Positions 1 to 13,780 are shown, numbered from the stretch's first letter. The stretch is 13,780 nt of DNA from Selaginella moellendorffii (GCF_000143415.4 NW_003314545.1:1-13780); one strand, 5' to 3'. Notes: generated by a model not told the origin, from the sequence alone. Program-made: numbers and translations.

Positions 1-61
1 TGGCTGTTAAAACTGTCTTGCTTTCAAGAAGAATCGGCATTTAGCAATTTAAACTGCCTGC

Positions 62-382
62 GAATGGTGACCAAAGTCACGCAGTTGATCACTTAGCCCT
101 CTTGTTTCATGTGCTGAAAGATCTCTAGAGCAGGATGGAAATGCAGGCTTCGAGTAAACATTGAGGATAGAGGACCACACCGGCAGTCATCTTGTCGAGC
201 AAACTCCTTGCTTCCCTCAATCTCCTGGAACCTGAGGTAAATTTCCAAGCGCGCCTGGCAGATCGATGCATTGCTGGAGTAGCACAAGCACTAAAGGAGG
301 CGCTGGCAATGGAGAGCCTACCATGCTCAATGAGATCCACTGATTGCTTGAGTACTGCTGCTGAGGATCTGGCTGCAAGAGG
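62..382 (-). pseudogene. Degenerate PLS-class pentatricopeptide repeat (PPR) gene fragment
   Basis: The minus strand reads AAVLKQSVDLIEHG...SFSAC...GSRRLREARSLLDKMT. After a frameshift it reads ALEIFQHMKQEG*VINCVTLVTI. These match the plant PPR motifs GxLxEARxLFDxM and ALxLFxxMxxEGxxPNxVT. It has an in-frame TAA at 93-95 and a frameshift. Confidence 0.75.
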
Positions 383-3777: not shown

Positions 3778-4396
3778 ATTTATAATTAAATAATTAATAT
3801 AATACTTAAGGCTATGTTTTACTTGAAAAGAGTTTTAATACTTATTTTATGATAGGAAATGTTTTTTATCCTTCTCATCTTGCAAGTCCAGAAATAGTCA
3901 TTAATTATTCTGGGAGTGATAGATCTTTAATGTTAGTTAAGAGGTGAGAATTTTAAAAAAAGTAACTCTCAAGGATAAAGAGCAATTTACATGGTTGCCT
4001 AGTGATACTGTAATATGTAGTACATTATATTGGTGCAATGTGTTGGAATGAAAAAAAATGGCAAGTTCTGAAATACATGATTATGGAATATTCTGGTATG
4101 TTAATGATTCCTTACTTGCAATATAGACTGAAAATAGCATATTGGGTGTAAAAGAAAAATGTTAAGAAGTTTTCTTTTTATCAAAAGACAAACATACTAG
4201 TATATATTGATCTCTATTTTGATTATAGAAAAATAAATTAATATTCTGATAAGAAGTTTATAAGGTTAATTCAATAGCTATATAAAGAGGTGAGAGGTTT
4301 ATAGGATAATTTGTTTTTAAAATTCATTTTCAAGAGCTATACTTCTATATGAACATGTAATTAAAATCATTATTAATTTCTCATTTTATTTCTTAA

Positions 4397-4575
4397 TATA
4401 AAGTTTGTAAATACATGTATGTATATACATGTATTACCTTGCCTAAGTCATACACTAATTATAATACTAAAGCATATGAACCATCCATTTGAGATTTAAT
4501 CTGGTCCATCCATTAGTGTATATAAGTAGGGGTGTGAACCCCAATTAATATACTTATTCCTATATCTTGAGCACA
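4397..4575 (+). repeat. 5' LTR
   Basis: tataaagtttgtaaatacat...cattagtgtatataag...tatatcttgagcaca is colinear with 6688-6874. The terminal TG appears as TA. Confidence 0.85.
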
Positions 4576-5896
4576 ATTTATCCCTAAAGGGCAAAACCTT
4601 TTGGTAGTGCTTTACTTTAGTGTTTGGGATTGTGTTTTTTTGTTCTTATTTTGTCATTCTCTTTTAGATTTAGATTTGTATTAGCTTTTTGCAAAATCTA
4701 GAATTTTAGCTATTATTGTGCTTAGATCTGCTCTTTTTTCTAATCTTCATTGCATTCTTTTCTTCTACCATACCACACTGTTATCAATCAAAGAGTATAT
4801 CACTTAAGGCTGCTAATGCTACTTCATTGAATCAAACTTTTGGTGTTGTAAGGTATAATCATATTGGTGTTACACCCATCCTTGGTGTGTTGCCATCTCT
4901 AGTTTTTTTAGGACATGATTACACAGCTTGTTCTATTCTTAGTGTTCTGCAATCTCCCATTGATGTGGAGTGTGATTATGATATTGATTGGTGAGCTATG
5001 AATAATGCAATCCAATTCTTGAAGAATGTTTGAGGATTAAGTTTATGGGAAGACAATGTGTACGAGCTCAAATGGATTCCAAAGTGTGATGATAAGTTTG
5101 ATTATTATGAAGATAGCTTTAGAGATGAAATGGAGATTTTATGAGGTAGATGTCAATCTTTCAATCTGCTATTTAATCCTTTCTCTTTCCCTTCTGCTCT
5201 TTCCCAATGTTTTCTTATTTCTCGGTTTGAGCCATCTTCTCATATTCCTAGTATTTCTTCATCAGTGTTTTCTTCTCCTGACACGTCAATCATTTGTGAC
5301 TCTCATGATTCTCATTCTCAGTCTAGTGTTGAGTTGAGTGTTTTCTATCCTCTTTATACTAATTTAGACATTGAGTGTATCCATGAAGTTGAGAATTTTA
5401 CTTTTGTTTCATTGGCAAAATCTTTGATTAGTTCTAGTGTTAAGTATTCCCCTGTCCCAAAGGTTGAGTCACTTTGGCCAGAGTTTTGGGTTAAATGCAT
5501 GTCCCCACTTATGAGTGCCACTAAAAGCTTTTGCTTTATCATTGTTGCTGAGGAATTTATGTATTCCCTTAAGTGCGTGGGTGTTATTATTGATTTTTCT
5601 GTCTTAAGTGTTAAATTGTATATTGAGGAGGTTGAGCAATGTGAATCTTTTGCTTATATTGTGGTGGCCAAAGTATTTTTCCAATATTTGAGCATATGTC
5701 CTTTTTTTGATTTCCCCATTTTTGCATTTTTAGTTACTACAAATTCTCTCTTGATACCTCTTTATCCACTTTTTCTTCTTTTACAATTATTTTTCCTCAA
5801 TTTTTCTTGTTTTCTTCTTTCTACCTCGACACTTCAAACTTTTTTTTCTTTGAAGAAGGGGGTAGAGGGGACGAACGAGAGTCCAACTCCGGCAAT

Positions 5897-6190
5897 GGAG
5901 TGAGGACAAGTGAATACAGTAGTGGAGTGAGGACGAATGACATAGATTGTAGAGTGAGGACAAGCATAACAAGTCTGAACGGAACATTCGGCCCTGACGA
6001 TGGAATGAAGACAAATGAACACAATAGTGGAGTGAGGACAAACAACATAGATTGTGGAGTGAGGACAAGCATAGCAAGTCTAAATAGAACATTTGGCCCC
6101 AACATAATGAGGACAAATGGATGCAATAGTGGAGTGAGGTTGAACATAGATAGCGAAGTGAAGACGAGCACAGTGAGTCCGAATGGAGTC
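5897..6190. repeat. Higher-order tandem repeat (~105 bp = 27+27+30+21 bp subunits, ~2.8 copies) inside the LTR element
   Basis: The core GGAGTGAGGACAA recurs. Units start at 5897, 6002 and ~6104, and the block is GC-richer than its flanks. Confidence 0.9.
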
Positions 6191-6687
6191 AGTGCTTCAA
6201 AATTTTTTTCCTTCGAAAAGGGGATATAAAGGATATAGAGGACAAACAAAATGAGTCTAACCCCCCATATGCAATGCTAAACAAAGATGATGGTTCTACT
6301 TATGGTCTTAAATTCGAGTTAATGGTTGTCTTAGAGGATCGTTGACATGCAAATTTAGAGATGGGATGTATCATTTGTTACAATGGTGTTCTATAAACTA
6401 TAATAGCTCTTAAAATCCCTTTCTTTGGTTCAAAATATGGTTGTGTAGTTGGTTTGAGCATTTTAGAGCTGTATCTGGAGTTGCAACTCGTTTATCAGGA
6501 TTCTGTAGTTGGTTGATATTTATGCTATGGCTTTGGGTTTTATTTCAATCATAGTTATTAGCAACTTTATTAGTGATTTTGTGGGAGCTTTAGATTTTTG
6601 TGGTAATTTATAATCACCTAGCAGAAACTCTAGATGTTCCACCTGACTTATTTTCATCATTTTTTCATCTTCCAGAGGGAAGGATAG

Positions 6688-6874
6688 TGTAAAGTTTGTA
6701 GATACATATATGTATATATATATATGTATTACCTTGCTTAAGTAATACACTAATTATAGTACTAAAGCATATGGACCATCAATTTGGGATTGAATCTAGT
6801 CCATCCATTAGTGTATATAAGCAAGGGTCTAAACCCCAATTAATATACCTATTCCTATATCCTAAGCACTCACA
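6688..6874 (+). repeat. 3' LTR
   Basis: tgtaaagtttgtagatacat...cattagtgtatataag...cctaagcactcaca directly follows the PPT and contains a TATA-like TATATAAG. Confidence 0.85.
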
Positions 6875-7235: not shown

Positions 7236-7685
7236 ATGAAAATATTTTATGTTTTTATTATATGGAATTTTCTTATAACATTCATTGACTGCTTTATTCA
7301 AACTGATAATGTAAGCTAATGTCTGAATTTTTTCTTTGTTAATTCCTTCTTACTCATTTAGTGCTATGGATTACTATATCATTGCCCAGATGTTCAATTG
7401 CTTGGAGATAGTGTTTTACAAGCAAATTGTCCAAATGATGTGGAATTAGATTTAGAATACTATTTAACAAATGTAAATGGAAACATTCAAGCTATTACCG
7501 TGGGATCACATGATAATGGTTATTTTACACATTCATGTCAAGGTACAATACTTGAAGGATCCATTTTAAAAACAAAATGTGCTTCAGTAGCTTCTTATCT
7601 TCATTACACAGCTATTGACTTGAACTTATGGATTTCTTATCAAAATAACAAGTTAGTGTTTTGTAATCAAAATAGAGATCAGTAA
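7236..7685 (+). CDS. Secreted cyanovirin-N homolog (CVNH-domain lectin), CVNH-A1; 2 exons 7236-7310 + 7362-7685, 132 aa, apparently intact
   Basis: Exon 1 MKIFYVFIIWNFLITFIDCFIQTDN is signal-peptide-like, with an alternative in-frame ATG at 7215. A 51 bp phase-0 intron runs GTAAGC...TTTAG (7311-7361). Exon 2 is CYGLLYHCPDVQLLGDSVLQANCPNDVELDLEYYLTNVNGNIQ...GYFTHSCQGTILEGSILKTKC...IDLNLWISYQNNKLVFCNQNRDQ*. It shows the two CV-N repeats (FxxSC...LxGSxLxxxC...IDLxxxIxNxxGxL). Confidence 0.88.
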
Positions 7686-7713
7686 AAATTTTATTCCTGA
7701 GGAGTAAAAAGTA

Positions 7714-7977
7714 TTTATATTAATAAACACAACTGATTGCGTGCTCCTTTTATCACACTTTTATGACACCCATGTTGTTCCGATGCACACCACAAAAATG
7801 TACTACATATCTTCAGCGGCCATTCAAAATCCTCTTTATCTTGAGGATCACTTTCTTAAGCTCTTGTTGTTTCAATGTCACTTCCAGAATAAATAGTGGC
7901 TAATGCATTGCTTCATTTTCAAAGACAAGAATAGAAAACATTGCCCAAGATGCTAAAAGAACCAAAACTCTTGCCAT
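7714..7977 (-). pseudogene. S-protein homolog (SPH / self-incompatibility S1-like) pseudogene, copy 1
   Basis: ATG at 7977 gives MARVLVLLASWAMFSILVFENEAMH*. Shifted frames give YSGSDIE, LKKVIL and DKEDFEWPLKICSTFLWC. It is colinear with 12674-12892, but the LHC segment is deleted. The 3' boundary is approximate. Confidence 0.65.
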
Positions 7978-8105
7978 AAAGATAATTTCTAAAGTTTGTT
8001 TTCTTTGATAATCATAGTTGTTTGGATTGTAGCAACATCATTTAATAAAAGGTGGTCTTTCCGCCAGCTTCAAACTTTCATGCTTATTTTATGCCTTCGC
8101 ATCAA

Positions 8106-8676
8106 ATGGCGTTCATAGCAATGCTACTGCTGCTCCTCCTTTCACAAGTTCATCAAAGCATATGTTAAGGAACACAAGTTTAAAGAGTTCTTTGTTTGCC
8201 ATTCAATCATTTGTGCTGCGGTGCCTTTTTTAACAGCTACAAGGACCATAGATACTTTCCCGATACCGACATATTGGAAGCCGACTTCTCTGGCACAGCA
8301 CGACACTGCTCGCTCACAAATATGTAAGGAAACACTTATAATTTTGCTCGAAAATGTGATTGTTCTTTGTTTGCCATTCAATCAGTTGTGCTGAAAGCTG
8401 CAAGGATCCCAAATACCATCTTAATACCGACGTACTCGAAGTCAACTTCTCTGGAGAGTATTCAGCACGGACACGGACACTGCTCGATAACACACTCACA
8501 AATCTCAATGGCAGCCTGGCTTACGGCAGAGAAGGCGGTTTTTGGGACACTTGCAGCGAAATTGTTCTTGTTGGTTCGAATCTGGACGCTACCTGAGGCG
8601 CAGATGGTAACTGGCCAGCATAGAACAAAGCAACGACCATGGAAACTTCGTCATTTGCAGCCGCTACGGCCTCTAG
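8106..8676 (+). pseudogene. CVNH-B1 pseudogene (secreted cyanovirin-N homolog) with internal duplication
   Basis: Exon 1 (8106-8159) is MAFIAMLLLLLLSQVHQS. The intron donor reads AT (8160) and the acceptor reads AT (8209-8210). A partial exon LCCGAFFNSYKD...ILEADFSG follows. A second intron+exon copy from ~8320 gives SCKDPKY...TLTNLNGSLAYGREGGFWDTCSEIVLVGSNLDAT* and, in a shifted frame, SNDHGNFVICSRYGL*. Confidence 0.82.
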
Positions 8677-9262
8677 TAAATTGAGAGAAGCACCAAAATC
8701 AGAAAGAATAAAATCAAAAAGGATTTATACATTTCAAGCTTAAAGATAACGATCCGCTGCTAAAGTTTGACGAGCTTACTCTTGTAAGTCGTCCATATGG
8801 TCCTTGAATCCAATAACTAAAAACAAGCTTAAGCCACGGTCCAGAGAGATGGAAAAAGAAAACTGACGAGTACCTTTTTAGCTTTTGCAAAGATAGCTCC
8901 AGAGCATGGCATTTCGTGAGATCGTGACGAGAAACGTTAGGTAGATCTCTCGCTCCCAGTGTCTGAAGAATCTGACAGCCCAAAGTATCGGAGATGTAAA
9001 TACACTAAAAAACAGCGAGTTTTGATCTGGAAAGTACGGAAGTATGTAAGATAACTAAAAACATGCAATAACCAGACAGTTAACCTCTCTACTTAATGGC
9101 AGATGCTGTCACGGCTTGAAACTACAGCCGTGTTTCCTGCTCTGAAAGCCACTCAAAAGAAAACTAGATCCCAAACTCACCAGTGAAAGCTTAATCGTGG
9201 CTTGAGTAGTGCGCTTTAGACTTTGGTCTTTTTGGTTGGCTGTTGTCTTCTTTCACCTAATT

Positions 9263-9505
9263 TATCCGCTCAAAAGCGTTGTACTTTGTGCACATGTTCA
9301 CAAGAGAAATACCAATGTCAAGAACTTCGTGGTATATAGCCACTTTCAACAAAACACCAAGTCATAGAAAACTCTGGCAGTAGTAGGTAAGAATGGTTTT
9401 GCTTGATGAAGGATCTCTAGAGCATGCTGGAATGCTGCTTTGGTAGTAAATTCAGTTTCACACTGCTAGGTCCCTGGCAGTCATCTTGTTGAACATACTC
9501 CACTA
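9263..9505 (-). pseudogene. Degenerate PPR gene fragment, paralog of the 62-382 remnant
   Basis: Frameshifted pieces read SMFNKMTARDLAV*N, HALEILHQ, VESGY and DIGISLVNMCTKYNAFERI, matching the PPR motifs FDxMxxRDxxxWN and IGxSLVNMYxKCG. It shares GATCTCTAGAGCA and GGCAGTCATCTTGT with 120-195. Confidence 0.75.
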
Positions 9506-9578
9506 GCAGTCTGAGAATATTTATTCTTTATATTTATATTTTATATTTATTTATTATCATTATATAGATATTTATATA

Positions 9579-10325
9579 TGTGAGTGCTATATGTGTCTAA
9601 ACCCCTATTTATATACCAAAATAGCATATGCTATAATTTATGTATTACACAAGGTGTTATATATATATATATATATATATATTGTATATGTATTTATAAA
9701 CCTTACACCATTATCTCTTCCAAAAGATGAAAAAGTAATGACAATAAGTTAGGTAGAACATCTAGAGCTCCTATTAGGTGATTATAGATTGCAATAAGAA
9801 CCTAAAACTCCTATGGAACATTGTTAACAACCATGATAGAAATAAAAACTTAAACTTATAGCACAAGCATTAGTCAACTATAGAACTAATAAATTACTTA
9901 CCACTCAATGTGTAAGTGCAAAATACTCAAACTAACCTCAAAGTTATAATTTTGAACCAAAATAAAAGACTTTAAGAGCCATTTCAATTCACAAAACACC
10001 ATTATAACAAATGATATATTTCATTTTAATTTTGCCTATTGGCCACCCTCTAATACCATCATTAACTGGGACTCACTACTATCAATAAAATTTATTTTTA
10101 CGTCTTCCCTTTAGTTAACCTTTGAGGCCTATGTTAACTCATACTTATAACTTTCATCATTATCTAGCATTGCATATGGGAAGTTAAACTCAATTCATTT
10201 ATTTTCCACATCCTCTTTATCCCCTCCTTAAAAGAAAAAAAGTAAAGGATAAATAAGTATTGAAAGAAGAATTTTTAGGGCAAAAATGAGGAAATAAGAA
10301 GAACTAAATATGCTCAAAGCTTGAC
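9579..10325 (-). mobile_element. Truncated inverted copy of the 4397-6874 LTR element (3' LTR 9579-9707 + PPT + 3' internal region)
   Basis: The reverse complement aligns with ~5685-6874. For example, GAACATCTAGAG...TAGGTGATTATA matches 6609-6638 and GCATTGCATATGGG matches 6264-6277. The LTR runs TGTAAGGTTT...GCACTCACA on the minus strand. Confidence 0.85.
9658..9682. repeat. (TA)n microsatellite within the inverted LTR
   Basis: About 12 TA units, expanded relative to the corresponding tract in the two other LTR copies. Confidence 0.9.
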
Positions 10326-10953
10326 TAATAAGTTTATTGTCTTATATTAATCTAATATTTGTGTTTAATGTAATTTTAAAATATTTGGATGTCCTCTAAG
10401 AATATTTAAAGTATATTTTAAAAGTCATCTGTAAATAGTCATGTTTGGCCCCCTCAATAAGGTATGGTGGCACTTTGGCAAGATAAGTAGTTTCTAGTAA
10501 GATCAGCTTATGACCTTGTGTCCACTCTACTGTTTGGGGGTTTAGTGAATATCCACATATGTTCTTATAAATCAAAATATTCAGTTTATATTCTTGTAAA
10601 ACCTCATGAATATTTGGGCTTAACTTGTAGTGCATATGAATTTGGAGTTAAACTCTAAACATGTTGCACTACAAAATGAGGGTTTGGTACACACTCAAAA
10701 TCCCTTATAAACACTAATTTCCTATCTCCACTAGCAGATTTAGGCACTTACCATAAATAGCATTGGGGCATGATAATGAGGGTGTTTTGCAAATACAATA
10801 AACTATCATTAGTGATATTGAGGGATTAGACTTAATACACAAGGGTTCTTGTTATTAGCTAATGCAAAATATAACAAGACAAAAGCTACTTATTGAGTTA
10901 AATATTATAAGCAATCAAAAGGAACAACTTGAGTGACGATCTATAAAGAGGGA

Positions 10954-11345
10954 AAGATAGCTTACATTCTTATCATATTGAACTTTTTAATAATATTCAT
11001 TCAAGGATTTCAAGATATCAATAGTATAAGCTAATATTTTAGGTTTTTCTTTGTTAATTCATTTTCAATTTTTAGTGTGCTATATAATTGCTTAAAATTT
11101 ATATTTCTTGAAGGTAAAACCTTAAAGAAAATTTTCCAAATGTAGTGAAATTAAATTTAGCCTACTTTTTATCAAATGTAAATGAGAACATTGAAGATAT
11201 TAAAGTGAACTCAGATGATAATGGTTATTTTATACGTTCATGTAAGTGTAAAACTCTTGAAGGATCAATTTTAAAAACCAATTATGCTTCAAAAACCTTT
11301 TATCTTCATATTACACTACTATTGACTTATCAAAATAAAGAGTAG
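10954..11345 (+). pseudogene. CVNH-A2 pseudogene
   Basis: The exon 1 relic KIAYILIILNFLIIFIQGFQDINS has no ATG. The donor at 11026 reads ATAAGCTAAT versus GTAAGCTAAT in A1, and the acceptor is at 11075. Exon 2 is frameshifted: LNLAYFLSNVNENI...DNGYFIRSCKCKTLEGSILKTNYAS, with Cys losses and a 3' deletion. Confidence 0.82.
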
Positions 11346-11499
11346 CTACTTATATTTTCTATATATTAAAAAACAATTCTTATTCTTGTTTTTATAAGCT
11401 TGCACTATAAGCTATAATTCCAACTTTTGCCTCATTTTCTTTGTTTTGCAGCTCCAACCTATTGTTGTTAATGATTAAACCATACATAAAACTTATCTT

Positions 11500-11830
11500 G
11501 TTTCATTAGACAAAAAGAAACCACCAATACCCTACTTAACATGCTTGGTTAGAATGTCAATATCCCAGAAATTTATTTCCCAAATGAAGCATGTTTTCTT
11601 GTTCTTTTTGTTCTATATCCAGAAAGCAAACACCACTTTTGATGCCTAGGCCCATAGTTATAGATGAAGTAGCACGCTTGATTGCTGTTTCTGGGAACAA
11701 TTATGTAAAATCATAAACCTTTTTGAAATGACAGCAGCAAGTTTTACTTGAAGTTCCAGTTGGTCTCCAAATTCCATGGCAATAGAAAGGTTGTGAGATT
11801 TGGAAGCTCCAGAAATGGTGATTCTTCTTC
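11500..11830 (-). mobile_element. Possible LINE (L1-like) ORF2 C-terminal remnant
   Basis: The minus frame LHL*LWA*ASKVVFAFWI*NKKNKKTCF resembles the L1 C-terminal WxIWxxRNxxxF motif. No RT core or clear poly-A tail is seen, and the boundaries are approximate. Confidence 0.35.
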
Positions 11831-12098
11831 TGGGCAACATAGAGTTTAAATACAAGATTAATCTTATTGCATATTAACTTGTTCAAGATTAATCTAAATG
11901 AATAACTGATAGAATATCCTAGAATCTTCAAGCAATATAGTTATAGGTTTGCTTAAGAAAAACAAAATGTGGCATTTAAGCTACCATATAAACATCTAAA
12001 TAAAGATATAATAATACCACCACATAGAATATGAAACTAGTATTAAATTATCCTATTAAAAAGCTTCAGTCACTCTCAAATATTTAATTATGAATATC

Positions 12099-12449
12099 AT
12101 TAAAATAGCCTATATTCTTATCATATGGAATTTTTTTTATAATATTCATTGGAGATTTTAATCAAATTAATTTAATATCTTATTTTCTTGTTAATTATTT
12201 ATTTTTGTTTAGTGTTATTTATTACTATATTTTATTAATACTAATGGGACATTAAAGCTATTGGTGTTTTTTCACAATTTGATGGGCACTTTACACATTC
12301 ATGTTAGATTCAACTCTTGAAGGATCCATTTTAAAAACCAATTGTCTTTCAAAAACATTAAATCTTCATTATAGTTCTATTGACTTGAACTTATGGGTTT
12401 CTTATTAAAATAAGAATTTATTTTTCTGTAATAAAATAAAAATCAATAA
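12099..12449 (+). pseudogene. CVNH-A3 pseudogene
   Basis: IKIAYILIIWNF has the ATG replaced by ATT. The donor is lost and the first repeat is largely deleted. The C-terminal part STLEGSILKTNCLSKTLNLHYSSIDLNLWVSY*NKNLFFCNK is colinear with A1. Confidence 0.85.
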
Positions 12450-12673
12450 ATTTTTTACCATCTATCATTTTGTGTAAATAAAAGTATTTCATAATCTGAA
12501 AGAAAAACATCTTATTATATTATTAAACACAATTTTTACACCTAATATGTTGTTCTTAACCCGTATTGCATGCAAGGATATCCTATGTCACAATTAACAT
12601 GCCAAAATATTACTCCATAATCGTGTACGCATATGCTGTCTGTTCACTTATATATGACACATTCTGAAATGCA

Positions 12674-12892
12674 TCATAACCAAAATAATGTGCTACATTT
12701 TACATTATCAGTAAGCGACCATGTCAATTTTTCTTTATCCTTGAAGGTTACTTTTTTATAATTTTTGTTTCCTAACTGACAGTGAAGATCTATGTCACTC
12801 CCAGAATAATTAGTGACTATACCTTCATTTGCAACCACTAGAAGGATTGAAAACATTACCCAAGATGCTAAAAGAACCAAAACTCTTGTCAT
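12674..12892 (-). pseudogene. S-protein homolog (SPH / self-incompatibility S1 family-like) gene, copy 2, prematurely truncated at 72 aa
   Basis: MTRVLVLLASWVMFSILLVVANEGIVTNYSGSDIDLHCQLGNKNYKKVTFKDKEKLTWSLTDNVKCSTLFWL* has a signal peptide and the SPH pattern VxN...LxxHC...W...TLFWC. It stops just after the position where the conserved Cys is expected (Leu here). A shifted frame continues YDAFQNVSYISEQTAYAYTIME*, which may be the lost C-terminus. Confidence 0.7.
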
Positions 12893-13049
12893 TCCTAGTA
12901 AAATATGAAGCTTTAATCGTTGCTCCAAACAAGCGCGTTGACAGGGCAACGAAAGAAACAAACGTACTTTCCATAGCTGTTAATCTTATTCTTTCCGCCA
13001 GCATTAGCTTTTAAACTTGGATCCTTGCTTTCTCAAGTTTTCGCATCAA

Positions 13050-13464
13050 ATGGGGTTCACAGCAATGCTCCATCAAAGCGTATGTACAGAAACACTTGAA
13101 AAGTCTGAAGAAATACCTTTGTGATCGTTCTTTTGTTTGTCATTCAATCAGTTGTGCTGCGGTGCCTTTTTCTACAGCTGCAAGAACCCCAAATACTTTC
13201 TCGATACCAACATTCTCGAAGCCGACTGCTCTGGAGACACCCCAGGGACACTGCTCGATAACAAACACACTCACAAATCTCAGAGGAAGCCTGGCTTATG
13301 GTAGAGAAGGTGGTTTTCGAGCCTCTTGCAGCAACATCACTCTTGTTGGTTCTAATTTAAGGCTCCCTGTGACACGGGAGGCGCAGATGGTAAGCCGACT
13401 GGACCGCAATTCGTACATAAGCAACGGCCATGGAAACTTCGTCATTTGCAGCCGCTACAGTTAG
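13050..13464 (+). pseudogene. CVNH-B2 pseudogene (exon 13050-13079, intron 13080-13151, exon 13152-13464)
   Basis: MGFTAMLHQS | GTATGT...AATCAG | LCCGAFFYSCKNPKYFLDTNILEADCSGDTPGTLLDN, then a 4-nt insertion (~13263). It continues TLTNLRGSLAYGREGGFRASCSNITLVGSNL...LDRNSYISNGHGNFVICSRYS*. The Leu-rich signal core is deleted (24 nt) relative to B1. Confidence 0.85.
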
Positions 13465-13780
13465 TACAGTAGCGCGTAGTCCTCTAGTACATTGAGAGAA
13501 GCACCAAAATCAGAAAGAATAAGCTCGAAAAGGATTTGCCTTTCAAGCTCTGTGATCGTTGTGTTCACGGCTTACATGGGGAGCTGGACAAGCATTTAAA
13601 AGTTAACGATCCGCTGCTTACTCAGGCATTTGTAAGTCGTCCGTATGGTAGAGCTCGGTCCTTGAATCAATCTATAGAAAACAAGCTTAAGCCACTGTCC
13701 AGACAAAGGTTGGACAAAGAAAACTGACGATCGTACCTTTCTTGCTTTCGAGAAGAATCGGCATTTAGCTCCAGAGCATG

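What the first reader, a model, noticed from the sequence alone, without database searches (positions are those of the whole stretch)
7236..13780. Tandemly amplified cassette of small secreted proteins: two distinct CVNH lectins flanking an S-protein homolog
Seen: the order CVNH-A(+), SPH(-), CVNH-B(+) is packed into ~1.4 kb and occurs twice, and all three gene types have signal-peptide-like starts. Known: CVNH domains are cyanovirin-N-like mannose-binding lectins with a patchy distribution (cyanobacteria, ascomycetes, seedless plants). SPH proteins are secreted ligand-like proteins related to the Papaver stigma S-determinant. Inference: this may be a co-regulated extracellular recognition or defence cluster (lectin + ligand-like protein) under birth-and-death evolution. 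I know of no described CVNH-SPH linkage, but passive co-duplication of neighbours is a real alternative.
Basis: partly seen in the sequence, partly recalled or inferred. Interest (0 to 1): 0.78.

Follow-up and report, generated by a model that had tools for sequence, protein, structure and literature searches.

The report
Decayed spikemoss lectin/SPH gene cluster
A stretch of spikemoss (Selaginella moellendorffii) DNA holds repeated copies of a three-gene block for small secreted proteins (two cyanovirin-type lectins and a relative of the poppy self-incompatibility ligand). Every copy but one lectin gene is broken, so this is mainly a gene graveyard made by block duplication, not a working defence cluster.

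Summary
The order CVNH-A(+), SPH-like(-), CVNH-B(+) occupies about 1.4 kb and occurs twice in direct orientation (7236-8676 and 12093-13464).

- **Family calls.** Both CVNH calls are solid. A1 scores 30.4 bits on Pfam (cut-off 24.5) and matches cyanovirin-N in the PDB at E 1e-8. The B copies are 62-69% identical to the annotated S. moellendorffii CVNH protein SELMODRAFT_415071. The SPH call is moderately supported. Pfam gives only 16.4 bits, but an all-library phmmer search hits a bona fide Linum SPH at E 2e-4.
- **State of the genes.** Only A1 (132 codons, 51-nt intron) is intact. All three SPH copies, both B copies and A0, A2 and A3 carry stops, frameshifts, deletions or lost splice sites.
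- **Origin.** Copies differ by 0.14-0.32 substitutions per site. Intergenic DNA was copied along with the genes, so the repeated adjacency reflects old block duplications, direct and inverted.

The scan has already noted unannotated CVNH genes and two SPH-CVNH fusion genes on other DNA of this genome. I did not check those notes.

The parts
7236..7310 (+). CVNH-A1 exon 1 (25 codons, signal-peptide-like)
   Evidence: ATG at 7236, then a hydrophobic stretch, ending on a whole codon before a GTAAGC donor at 7311. Translation was checked.
7311..7361 (+). CVNH-A1 intron (51 nt, GT...AG, phase 0)
   Evidence: Read from the sequence. The annotated B-type homologue P0001 has its intron at the same place, between signal peptide and mature domain.
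7362..7685 (+). CVNH-A1 exon 2, a complete CVNH domain (107 codons plus stop). This is the only intact gene of the cluster.
   Evidence: Pfam PF08881 scores 30.4 bits against a cut-off of 24.5 and covers profile positions 5-101 of 102. In the PDB it matches tandem cyanovirin-N at E 1.1e-8 and Ceratopteris CVNH 2jzj at E 1.4e-5.
7718..7977 (-). SPH1, a heavily deleted SPH-like pseudogene
   Evidence: The signal-like start at 7977 is followed by a stop. Later pieces lie in other frames and internal sequence is missing compared with SPH2. It is 80% identical to SPH2 over 214 nt.
7978..8105 (.). 128-bp head-to-head spacer between the SPH1 and B1 start codons
   Evidence: The spacer aligns with its counterpart in cassette 2 (8096-8320 with 13040-13265).
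8106..8676 (+). CVNH-B1 pseudogene
   Evidence: tblastn with P0003's companion query P0001 gives 69% identity. The lesions:
- The donor site reads AT instead of GT at 8160.
- The first acceptor is lost.
- There is a 175-bp internal tandem duplication (8187-8293 and 8362-8454).
- There is a stop at 8594.
- There are frameshifts in the C-terminal half.

Pfam CVNH scores 22 bits on the longest piece.
8677..8908 (+). Flank downstream of B that was copied with the block
   Evidence: 87% identical to 13465-13780. No Pfam hit on its ORFs.
10954..11345 (+). CVNH-A2, a solo pseudogene
   Evidence: 73-76% identical to A1. The start codon and donor are lost. It has a 1-nt and a 17-nt deletion, a truncated end and lost cysteines.
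12093..12457 (+). CVNH-A3 pseudogene (cassette 2)
   Evidence: 78% identical to A1. A large deletion removes the exon 1/2 junction. It also has single-base deletions and two in-frame stops.
12542..12892 (-). SPH2, the best-preserved SPH-like copy (116 codons with two in-frame stops)
   Evidence: The stops are at 12674-12676 and 12644-12646.
- Pfam PF05938 scores 16.4 bits, E 0.013, against the N-terminal half of the profile.
- The all-library phmmer search hits a Linum two-domain SPH at E 2.1e-4.
- The reciprocal tblastn gives E 1e-7.
- Shuffle z-scores are 11.9 and 7.2.
- The top Atlas hits are all PF05938.
12893..13049 (.). 157-bp head-to-head spacer between the SPH2 and B2 start codons
13050..13464 (+). 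CVNH-B2 pseudogene
   Evidence: 62% identical to P0001. Eight codons of the signal-peptide core are deleted. A 4-nt insertion near 13258 and at least two further frameshifts follow. Pfam CVNH scores 20.6 bits.
13465..13780 (+). Flank downstream of B2, cut off by the window end
   Evidence: Aligns with 8685-8908. Positions 13737-13769 also match window 13-45 at 94%.
3824..4123 (+).
   Evidence: 77-80% identical to SPH2 in inverted orientation. It has several stops and frameshifts. tblastn with the Linum SPH gives E 2e-4 and includes the second half of the domain.
4165..4385 (-). CVNH-A0, an inverted pseudogene that converges on SPH0
   Evidence: 72-76% identical to A1 and A3. It has at least four stops and several indels.
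5682..6759 (.). Left arm of a degenerate inverted duplication (partner 9631-10323)
   Evidence: About 70% identical in inverted orientation. Together with SPH0/A0 against A3/SPH2 it forms one large palindrome-like arrangement, 3824-6759 against 12891-9631, centred on cassette 1.
9631..10323 (.). Right arm of the same inverted duplication

Best explanation
This is the decaying remnant of an old, segmentally duplicated block in an AT-rich, CpG-depleted part of the Selaginella moellendorffii genome.

**The ancestral block.** It packed three two-exon or single-exon genes for small secreted proteins into about 1.4 kb.
- A divergent cyanovirin-type lectin (A).
- An SPH-like protein on the other strand, tail-to-tail with A.
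- A second cyanovirin-type lectin (B, the SELMODRAFT_415071 type), head-to-head with SPH across a spacer of about 130-160 bp.

**What happened to it.** The block and its flanks were copied as whole segments, directly at least twice and once in inverted orientation. Nearly all copies then died. Today only CVNH-A1 has an open, spliceable reading frame and may still make a secreted lectin.

**Shown.** The copy map, the family calls, the lesions, the divergence and the composition.

**Inferred.**
- The ancestral genes were functional.
- The ancestral SPH and B genes shared a promoter.
- A1 is still under selection.
- The AT-richness comes from methylation-driven C-to-T decay.
For: - **Copy map.** It comes from self-blastn and the repeat finder.
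- **Segmental copying.** Spacers and the flank downstream of B align as well as the genes do. K2P distances are 0.14-0.32 for all components.
- **CVNH calls.**. B1 and B2 are 62-69% identical to the annotated CVNH protein P0001 (SELMODRAFT_415071, UniRef D8RUX5).
- **SPH call.**
- **Lesions.** They were read from frame-by-frame translations and alignments.
- **A1.** Its frame is open over 132 codons with canonical GT-AG. The three other A copies each carry at least three disabling lesions. A1 has fewer private changes (3 synonymous, 5 non-synonymous) than A3 (6:19) or A0 (4:29).
- **Composition.** CpG observed/expected is 0-0.2 at 20-33% GC in most A-copy and spacer DNA (0.4 in SPH1 and SPH2), against 0.6-0.9 at 41-47% GC in B and its flank.
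- **Left end of the window.** Positions 13-207 resemble the flank downstream of B. This suggests one more unit upstream of the window.
Against: - **Selection on A1 is not shown.** Pairwise dN/dS of A1 against its paralogues is 0.66-1.06. The private-change counts are too small for a test.
- **No expression data.** The splice junction is only predicted.
- **The SPH call is below the Pfam cut-off.** It scores 16.4 bits against 24. In the all-library search four of the five hits were Ig or ankyrin repeat proteins, one with a better E-value than the SPH hit.
- **The A1 structure model was uninformative.** Mean pLDDT was 34.8.
- **Fusion genes elsewhere.** Scan notes report intact SPH-CVNH fusion genes in this genome. 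If true, the pairing may be more than passive.
Confidence: 0.75

Rival explanations
1. SPH-like and CVNH proteins form a real two-component secreted module in spikemoss, a ligand-like protein plus a lectin that act or are regulated together. This locus is a dead paralogous copy of that module, and live versions exist elsewhere, including fused genes.
For: - The SPH and B start codons are head-to-head, 128 and 157 bp apart, in both cassettes. That fits a shared bidirectional promoter in the ancestor.
- The A/SPH tail-to-tail pair is kept in all three copies, including the inverted one.
- Scan notes s1-420043 and s1-394654 report SPH-CVNH fusion genes on other pieces of this genome. I did not check them.
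Against: - All adjacency in this window traces to one ancestral block that was copied as a segment, so it counts as a single event.
- Every SPH copy here is dead.
- No intact neighbour pair could be examined.
- No paper links the two families.
Confidence: 0.15
2. The cassette was captured and spread by a transposable element. Its repetition then reflects transposition and not segmental duplication.
For: - Cassette 1 lies between inverted repeats of about 0.5-1 kb (5682-6759 and 9631-10323).
- The surroundings are AT-rich and CpG-poor, like silenced repeats.
- A 185-bp repeat occurs at 4394-4574 and 6685-6869 at 87% identity.
Against: - No transposase or reverse-transcriptase domain was found in any ORF tested.
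- The inverted repeats belong to a larger inverted duplication that itself contains A and SPH copies.
- The cassettes share no defined termini.
Confidence: 0.07
3. The whole cluster, A1 included, is dead. A1 is simply a pseudogene that has not yet been hit by a stop or frameshift.
For: dN/dS of A1 against its paralogues is near 1. A1 sits in the same CpG-depleted, 28% GC DNA as the dead copies, with GC3 of 17%. The word search returned no protein at all for A1, not even an annotated product of the window itself.
Against: - The three sister copies of similar age each have at least three disabling lesions, and A1 has none.
- In 28% GC sequence about 8% of random codons are stops, so a 132-codon open frame with start, donor, acceptor and all six cysteines kept is unlikely by drift. 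This is my own rough estimate of about 0.01 or less, from the lesion counts.
Confidence: 0.3

Closest known systems
Cyanovirin-N homologue (CVNH) lectins of seedless plants, e.g. S. moellendorffii SELMODRAFT_415071 (D8RUX5) and Ceratopteris richardii CrCVNH (PDB 2jzj)
   Same: - **A1.** It has one full CVNH domain behind a signal-like exon, and it keeps cysteine pairs at the positions of the two cyanovirin disulfides.
- **B1 and B2.** They are 62-69% identical to SELMODRAFT_415071 and share its exon structure.
   Different: A1 is only about 30% identical to the B type. The word search returned no protein at all for it, not even an annotated product of the window itself. It is extremely AT-biased, with GC3 of 17%. 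The B copies here are pseudogenes. Sugar binding is untested.
SPH / Self-incomp_S1 family (PF05938), typified by Papaver rhoeas PrsS and Arabidopsis SPH15
   Same: - It is small, at 116 codons, with a signal-like start.
- The N-terminal half matches profile positions 11-51.
- The characteristic ...LHC..., ...TWS..DN..CSTLFW... and ...WHVN.D.G... stretches are present.
- The best non-repeat hit in the whole library is a Linum SPH.
   Different: It scores below the Pfam cut-off. All three copies are broken. The PDB search gave no hit, so solved SPH structures did not match. The family is reported in mosses and tracheophytes, lycophytes included (PMC10619864), so its presence here is not new.
Birth-and-death tandem clusters of small secreted cysteine-rich protein genes in plants
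   Same: There are repeated local duplications, rapid divergence, many pseudogenes beside a few live copies, and poor automatic annotation (SPADA paper PMC3924332, found, abstract only read).
   Different: Here three unrelated or distantly related genes were copied together as one compact block. The copying includes an inverted duplication.

Membership tests
CVNH (PF08881) | Profile match above the curated cut-off over the full domain | tested here: met
   A1 exon 2 scores 30.4 bits against 24.5 and covers profile positions 5-101 of 102. The B1 and B2 pieces score 22.0 and 20.6 bits, below the cut-off, because each piece is a fragment.
CVNH (PF08881) | Similarity to experimentally solved cyanovirin-N or CVNH proteins, with both sequence repeats present | tested here: met
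   A1 matches tandem cyanovirin-N 3s3y at E 1.1e-8, with both halves aligned. It also matches 2jzj at 1.4e-5 and 1n02 at 1e-3. P0001 gives a similar list.
CVNH (PF08881) | Close homology of the B type to an annotated CVNH protein | tested here: met
   P0001 (SELMODRAFT_415071, precomputed PF08881) matches at E 7e-17. tblastn identity is 62-69%.
CVNH (PF08881) | CVNH fold (pseudo-symmetric two-lobed beta structure) | tested here: inconclusive
   The AlphaFold2 model of A1 exon 2, built from a 6-row alignment, had mean pLDDT 34.8 and pTM 0.24. That is unusable, so no fold search was run.
CVNH (PF08881) | Binding of high-mannose glycans | not testable with these tools
   This needs recombinant protein and a glycan array.
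SPH / Self-incomp_S1 (PF05938) | Profile match above the curated cut-off (24 bits) | tested here: not met
   SPH2's N-terminal piece scores 16.4 bits, E 0.013, on profile positions 11-51 of 104. The C-terminal and other pieces gave no hit. The gene is split by stops, so only pieces could be scored.
SPH / Self-incomp_S1 (PF05938) | Significant similarity to a bona fide family member | tested here: met
   - phmmer against 1.84 billion representatives gives P0003 at E 2.1e-4. P0003 is a Linum grandiflorum protein with two PF05938 domains scoring 96.8 bits.
- The reciprocal tblastn hits SPH2 at 1e-7 and SPH0 at 2e-4.
- Shuffle z-scores are 11.9 and 7.2.
- Caveat: four Ig or ankyrin repeat proteins also passed E 1e-3.
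SPH / Self-incomp_S1 (PF05938) | Small secreted protein of about 110-140 residues with a signal peptide | tested here: inconclusive
   The frame is 116 codons with a hydrophobic N-terminus, judged by eye. No signal-peptide predictor was available, and the frame has two stops.
SPH / Self-incomp_S1 (PF05938) | SPH beta-sandwich fold | not tested
   No unbroken copy is available to fold. The PDB sequence search gave no hit.

The most novel reading that the evidence does not exclude
SPH-like proteins and cyanovirin-type lectins are functionally coupled in lycophytes. They are encoded as a compact head-to-head or tail-to-tail block here and, according to unchecked scan notes, as single fused genes elsewhere in the same genome. 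That 'Rosetta-stone' pattern would point to a secreted ligand-plus-lectin recognition or defence module. It would also give the first functional clue for SPH proteins outside poppy self-incompatibility.
Probability: 0.15. Interest if true: 0.6.

Novelty: new member of a known kind. Interest (0 to 1): 0.3.

Why it matters
It adds one probably live, unannotated and very AT-biased cyanovirin-type lectin gene to the Selaginella catalogue, along with a set of dead paralogues. It shows that small secreted-protein genes in this plant turn over by block duplication inside CpG-depleted DNA.

Its wider value is as one data point for a possible SPH-CVNH association, which only a genome-wide and cross-species test can settle. 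On its own the locus is ordinary: known families, passive co-duplication and mostly pseudogenes.

Tried and rejected
- **Word-based protein searches.** The SPH2 piece and A1 exon 2 found nothing. Only the B2 piece found a relative.
- **The look-up of encoding contigs.** It was closed, so the neighbourhood of SELMODRAFT_415071 and any intact CVNH-SPH pair could not be seen.
- **Short SPH and A pieces on Pfam.** They gave nothing useful.
- **Atlas search with SPH2's 33-residue C-terminal piece.** Uninformative.
- **PDB sequence search with the SPH2 piece.** No hit.
- **AlphaFold2 model of A1 exon 2.** Unusable at pLDDT 34.8, so no fold search was run.
- **Pfam on ten other ORFs of the window, and Rfam on the whole window.** Nothing.
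- **An SPH-CVNH fusion at this locus.** Rejected, because SPH is on the opposite strand to both CVNH types. It converges on A and diverges from B.
- **Assembly or haplotype duplication.** Rejected, because the copies differ by 14-32%.
- **The joined A1 model.** The spliced model (exon 1 plus exon 2) was only translated and counted in a local script. It was never sent to a search or fold tool. Searches were done exon by exon by reference, and the joined step was left out.


Full report
**What is there**

The window is AT-rich eukaryotic DNA, 25-45% GC. Earlier notes of this scan call the genome Selaginella moellendorffii. That fits the one database relative I found, SELMODRAFT_415071.

Self-comparison shows a repeated block:
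- **Cassette 1.** A1 (+, 7236-7685), SPH1 (-, 7718-7977), B1 (+, 8106-8676) and a shared downstream flank to at least 8908.
- **Cassette 2.** A3 (+, 12093-12457), SPH2 (-, 12542-12892), B2 (+, 13050-13464) and a flank that runs to the window end.
- **A solo copy.** A2 lies between the cassettes at 10954-11345.

With the inverted repeats 5682-6759 and 9631-10323, the segment 3824-6759 is a degenerate inverted copy of 12891-9631, and cassette 1 sits at the centre. The window's first 200 bases resemble the flank downstream of B. A further unit probably lies upstream of the window.

**Family calls**

*CVNH-A.* A1 exon 2 is a full-length CVNH domain. Pfam PF08881 scores 30.4 bits against a cut-off of 24.5 and covers profile positions 5-101 of 102. 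It matches cyanovirin-N itself (E 1e-8 against the tandem construct 3s3y) and the fern CVNH 2jzj (E 1.4e-5).

*CVNH-B.* B1 and B2 are 62-69% identical in pieces to the annotated 129-residue S. moellendorffii CVNH protein SELMODRAFT_415071, UniRef D8RUX5. That annotated model also confirms the shared gene structure: a signal-peptide exon, a phase-0 intron and a CVNH exon.

*SPH.* This call is weaker but holds.
- Pfam PF05938 gives 16.4 bits (E 0.013) on the N-terminal half.
- The protein-language-model Atlas puts only PF05938 clusters on top, at score 0.84, which is a lead only.
- A phmmer search of 1.84 billion representatives finds a Linum grandiflorum protein at E 2.1e-4. That protein has two Self-incomp_S1 domains scoring 96.8 bits.
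- That protein, searched back against the window, hits exactly SPH2 (1e-7) and SPH0 (2e-4, including the second half of the domain).
- The alignment stands 7-12 sd above shuffles.

The caveat is that four Ig or ankyrin repeat proteins also passed E 1e-3, through many short stretches. I take these as repeat-summed noise.

**State of the genes**

Frame-by-frame reading, tblastn with the intact B-type protein and DNA alignments give the following catalogue.

| Copy | State |
|---|---|
| A1 | Open frame of 132 codons, ATG, GTAAGC donor, TTTAG acceptor, 51-nt intron, all six cysteines kept |
| A2 | Start and donor lost, 1-nt and 17-nt deletions, truncated |
| A3 | Deletion across the exon junction, single-base deletions, two stops |
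| A0 | At least four stops and several indels |
| SPH2 | Two in-frame stops in an otherwise collinear 116-codon frame |
| SPH1 | Early stop and large internal losses |
| SPH0 | Several stops and frameshifts |
| B1 | Donor reads AT, first acceptor lost, 175-bp internal tandem duplication, stop at 8594, C-terminal frameshifts |
| B2 | Eight codons of the signal-peptide core deleted, a 4-nt insertion, at least two more frameshifts |

One of eight gene copies is intact.

**History**

Pairwise K2P distances are 0.14-0.32 for genes, spacers and flanks alike. The similarity runs through non-coding spacers. This is segmental duplication, direct and inverted, of one ancestral block, followed by decay. 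The fact that the gene order 'occurs twice' is therefore one event, not two independent ones.

**Is A1 alive?**

Pairwise dN/dS against its dead paralogues is 0.66-1.06, which does not show constraint. On the other hand:
- A1 has no lesion, while each sister copy has three or more.
- A1 has fewer private changes, 3 synonymous and 5 non-synonymous, against 6:19 for A3 and 4:29 for A0.
- Stop codons are frequent in DNA of this composition.

I put A1 being, or having recently been, under selection at about 0.7. Expression is unknown. The word search returned no protein at all for A1, not even an annotated product of the window itself, so the gene appears to be unannotated.

**Composition**

Most A-copy and spacer DNA has 20-33% GC and CpG observed/expected of 0-0.2, with SPH1 and SPH2 at about 0.4. 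B and its flank have 41-47% GC and CpG observed/expected of 0.6-0.9. The boundary lies between the SPH and B start codons in both cassettes, so it probably predates the duplication. The pattern fits long-term methylation-driven C-to-T decay in the A and SPH part. That is inference, and it agrees with scan note s1-385081.

*For it.* The ancestral block was extremely compact. The SPH and B start codons are head-to-head across only 128 and 157 bp, which suggests a shared promoter. The A/SPH pair is kept in all three copies. Scan notes report SPH-CVNH fusion genes elsewhere in this genome, which I did not check.

*Against it.* Nothing but A1 works here, and the repetition is passive.

*Literature.* The papers I found place CVNH in bryophytes, lycophytes and ferns (PMC6362431) and PF05938 in mosses and tracheophytes (PMC10619864). 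None mentions the two together.

**Verdict**

The thing itself is a mostly dead, block-duplicated cluster of known families, with one probably live unannotated CVNH gene. The scan has met unannotated CVNH genes and SPH-CVNH fusions before on other DNA of this genome.

**Method note**

The spliced A1 model was searched exon by exon by reference. The joined sequence was used only inside a local script for translation and base counts, and the joined search step was left out.

Noticed in passing
window 7978-8105 and 12893-13049 (boundary), with 7236-7990 against 8106-9500 and 12093-12892 against 13050-13780: A sharp composition boundary lies between the SPH and B start codons in both cassettes. 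On the A and SPH side GC is 20-35% and CpG observed/expected is 0-0.4. On the B side GC is 41-47% and CpG observed/expected is 0.6-0.9. It may mark a methylation boundary older than the duplication.
   Followed up: partly
window 5895-6187: There is a tandem array of a 105-bp unit (2.4 copies, 83% matches) with a 27-bp sub-repeat. Long ORFs cover it on both strands (5807-6229 + and 5821-6249 -) with no Pfam match. It is present in the left arm of the inverted duplication and absent from the right arm.
   Followed up: partly
window 4394-4574 and 6685-6869: This 185-bp direct repeat at 87% identity is the best-preserved repeat in the window. It has a TGTATATACATATA-type micro-repeat inside and may be a short transposon fragment.
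   Followed up: no
window 13-207: The left end of the window (44% GC) resembles the flank downstream of the B genes. Positions 13-45 match 13737-13769 at 94%, and 112-207 match 9404-9501. Another cassette probably lies just upstream of the window.
   Followed up: partly
window 12677-12892 (-): The phmmer search with the SPH2 piece also drew multi-domain immunoglobulin and ankyrin repeat proteins at E 1e-6 to 7e-4, through many short stretches. This is probably repeat-summed noise. SPH proteins are described as beta-sandwich (from memory), so a faint strand-pattern resemblance to Ig domains is possible.
   Followed up: no
window 7686-7717 and 12458-12541: A and SPH converge with only about 30-90 bp between their stop codons. 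In the ancestral live block their 3' ends must have overlapped or abutted.
   Followed up: no
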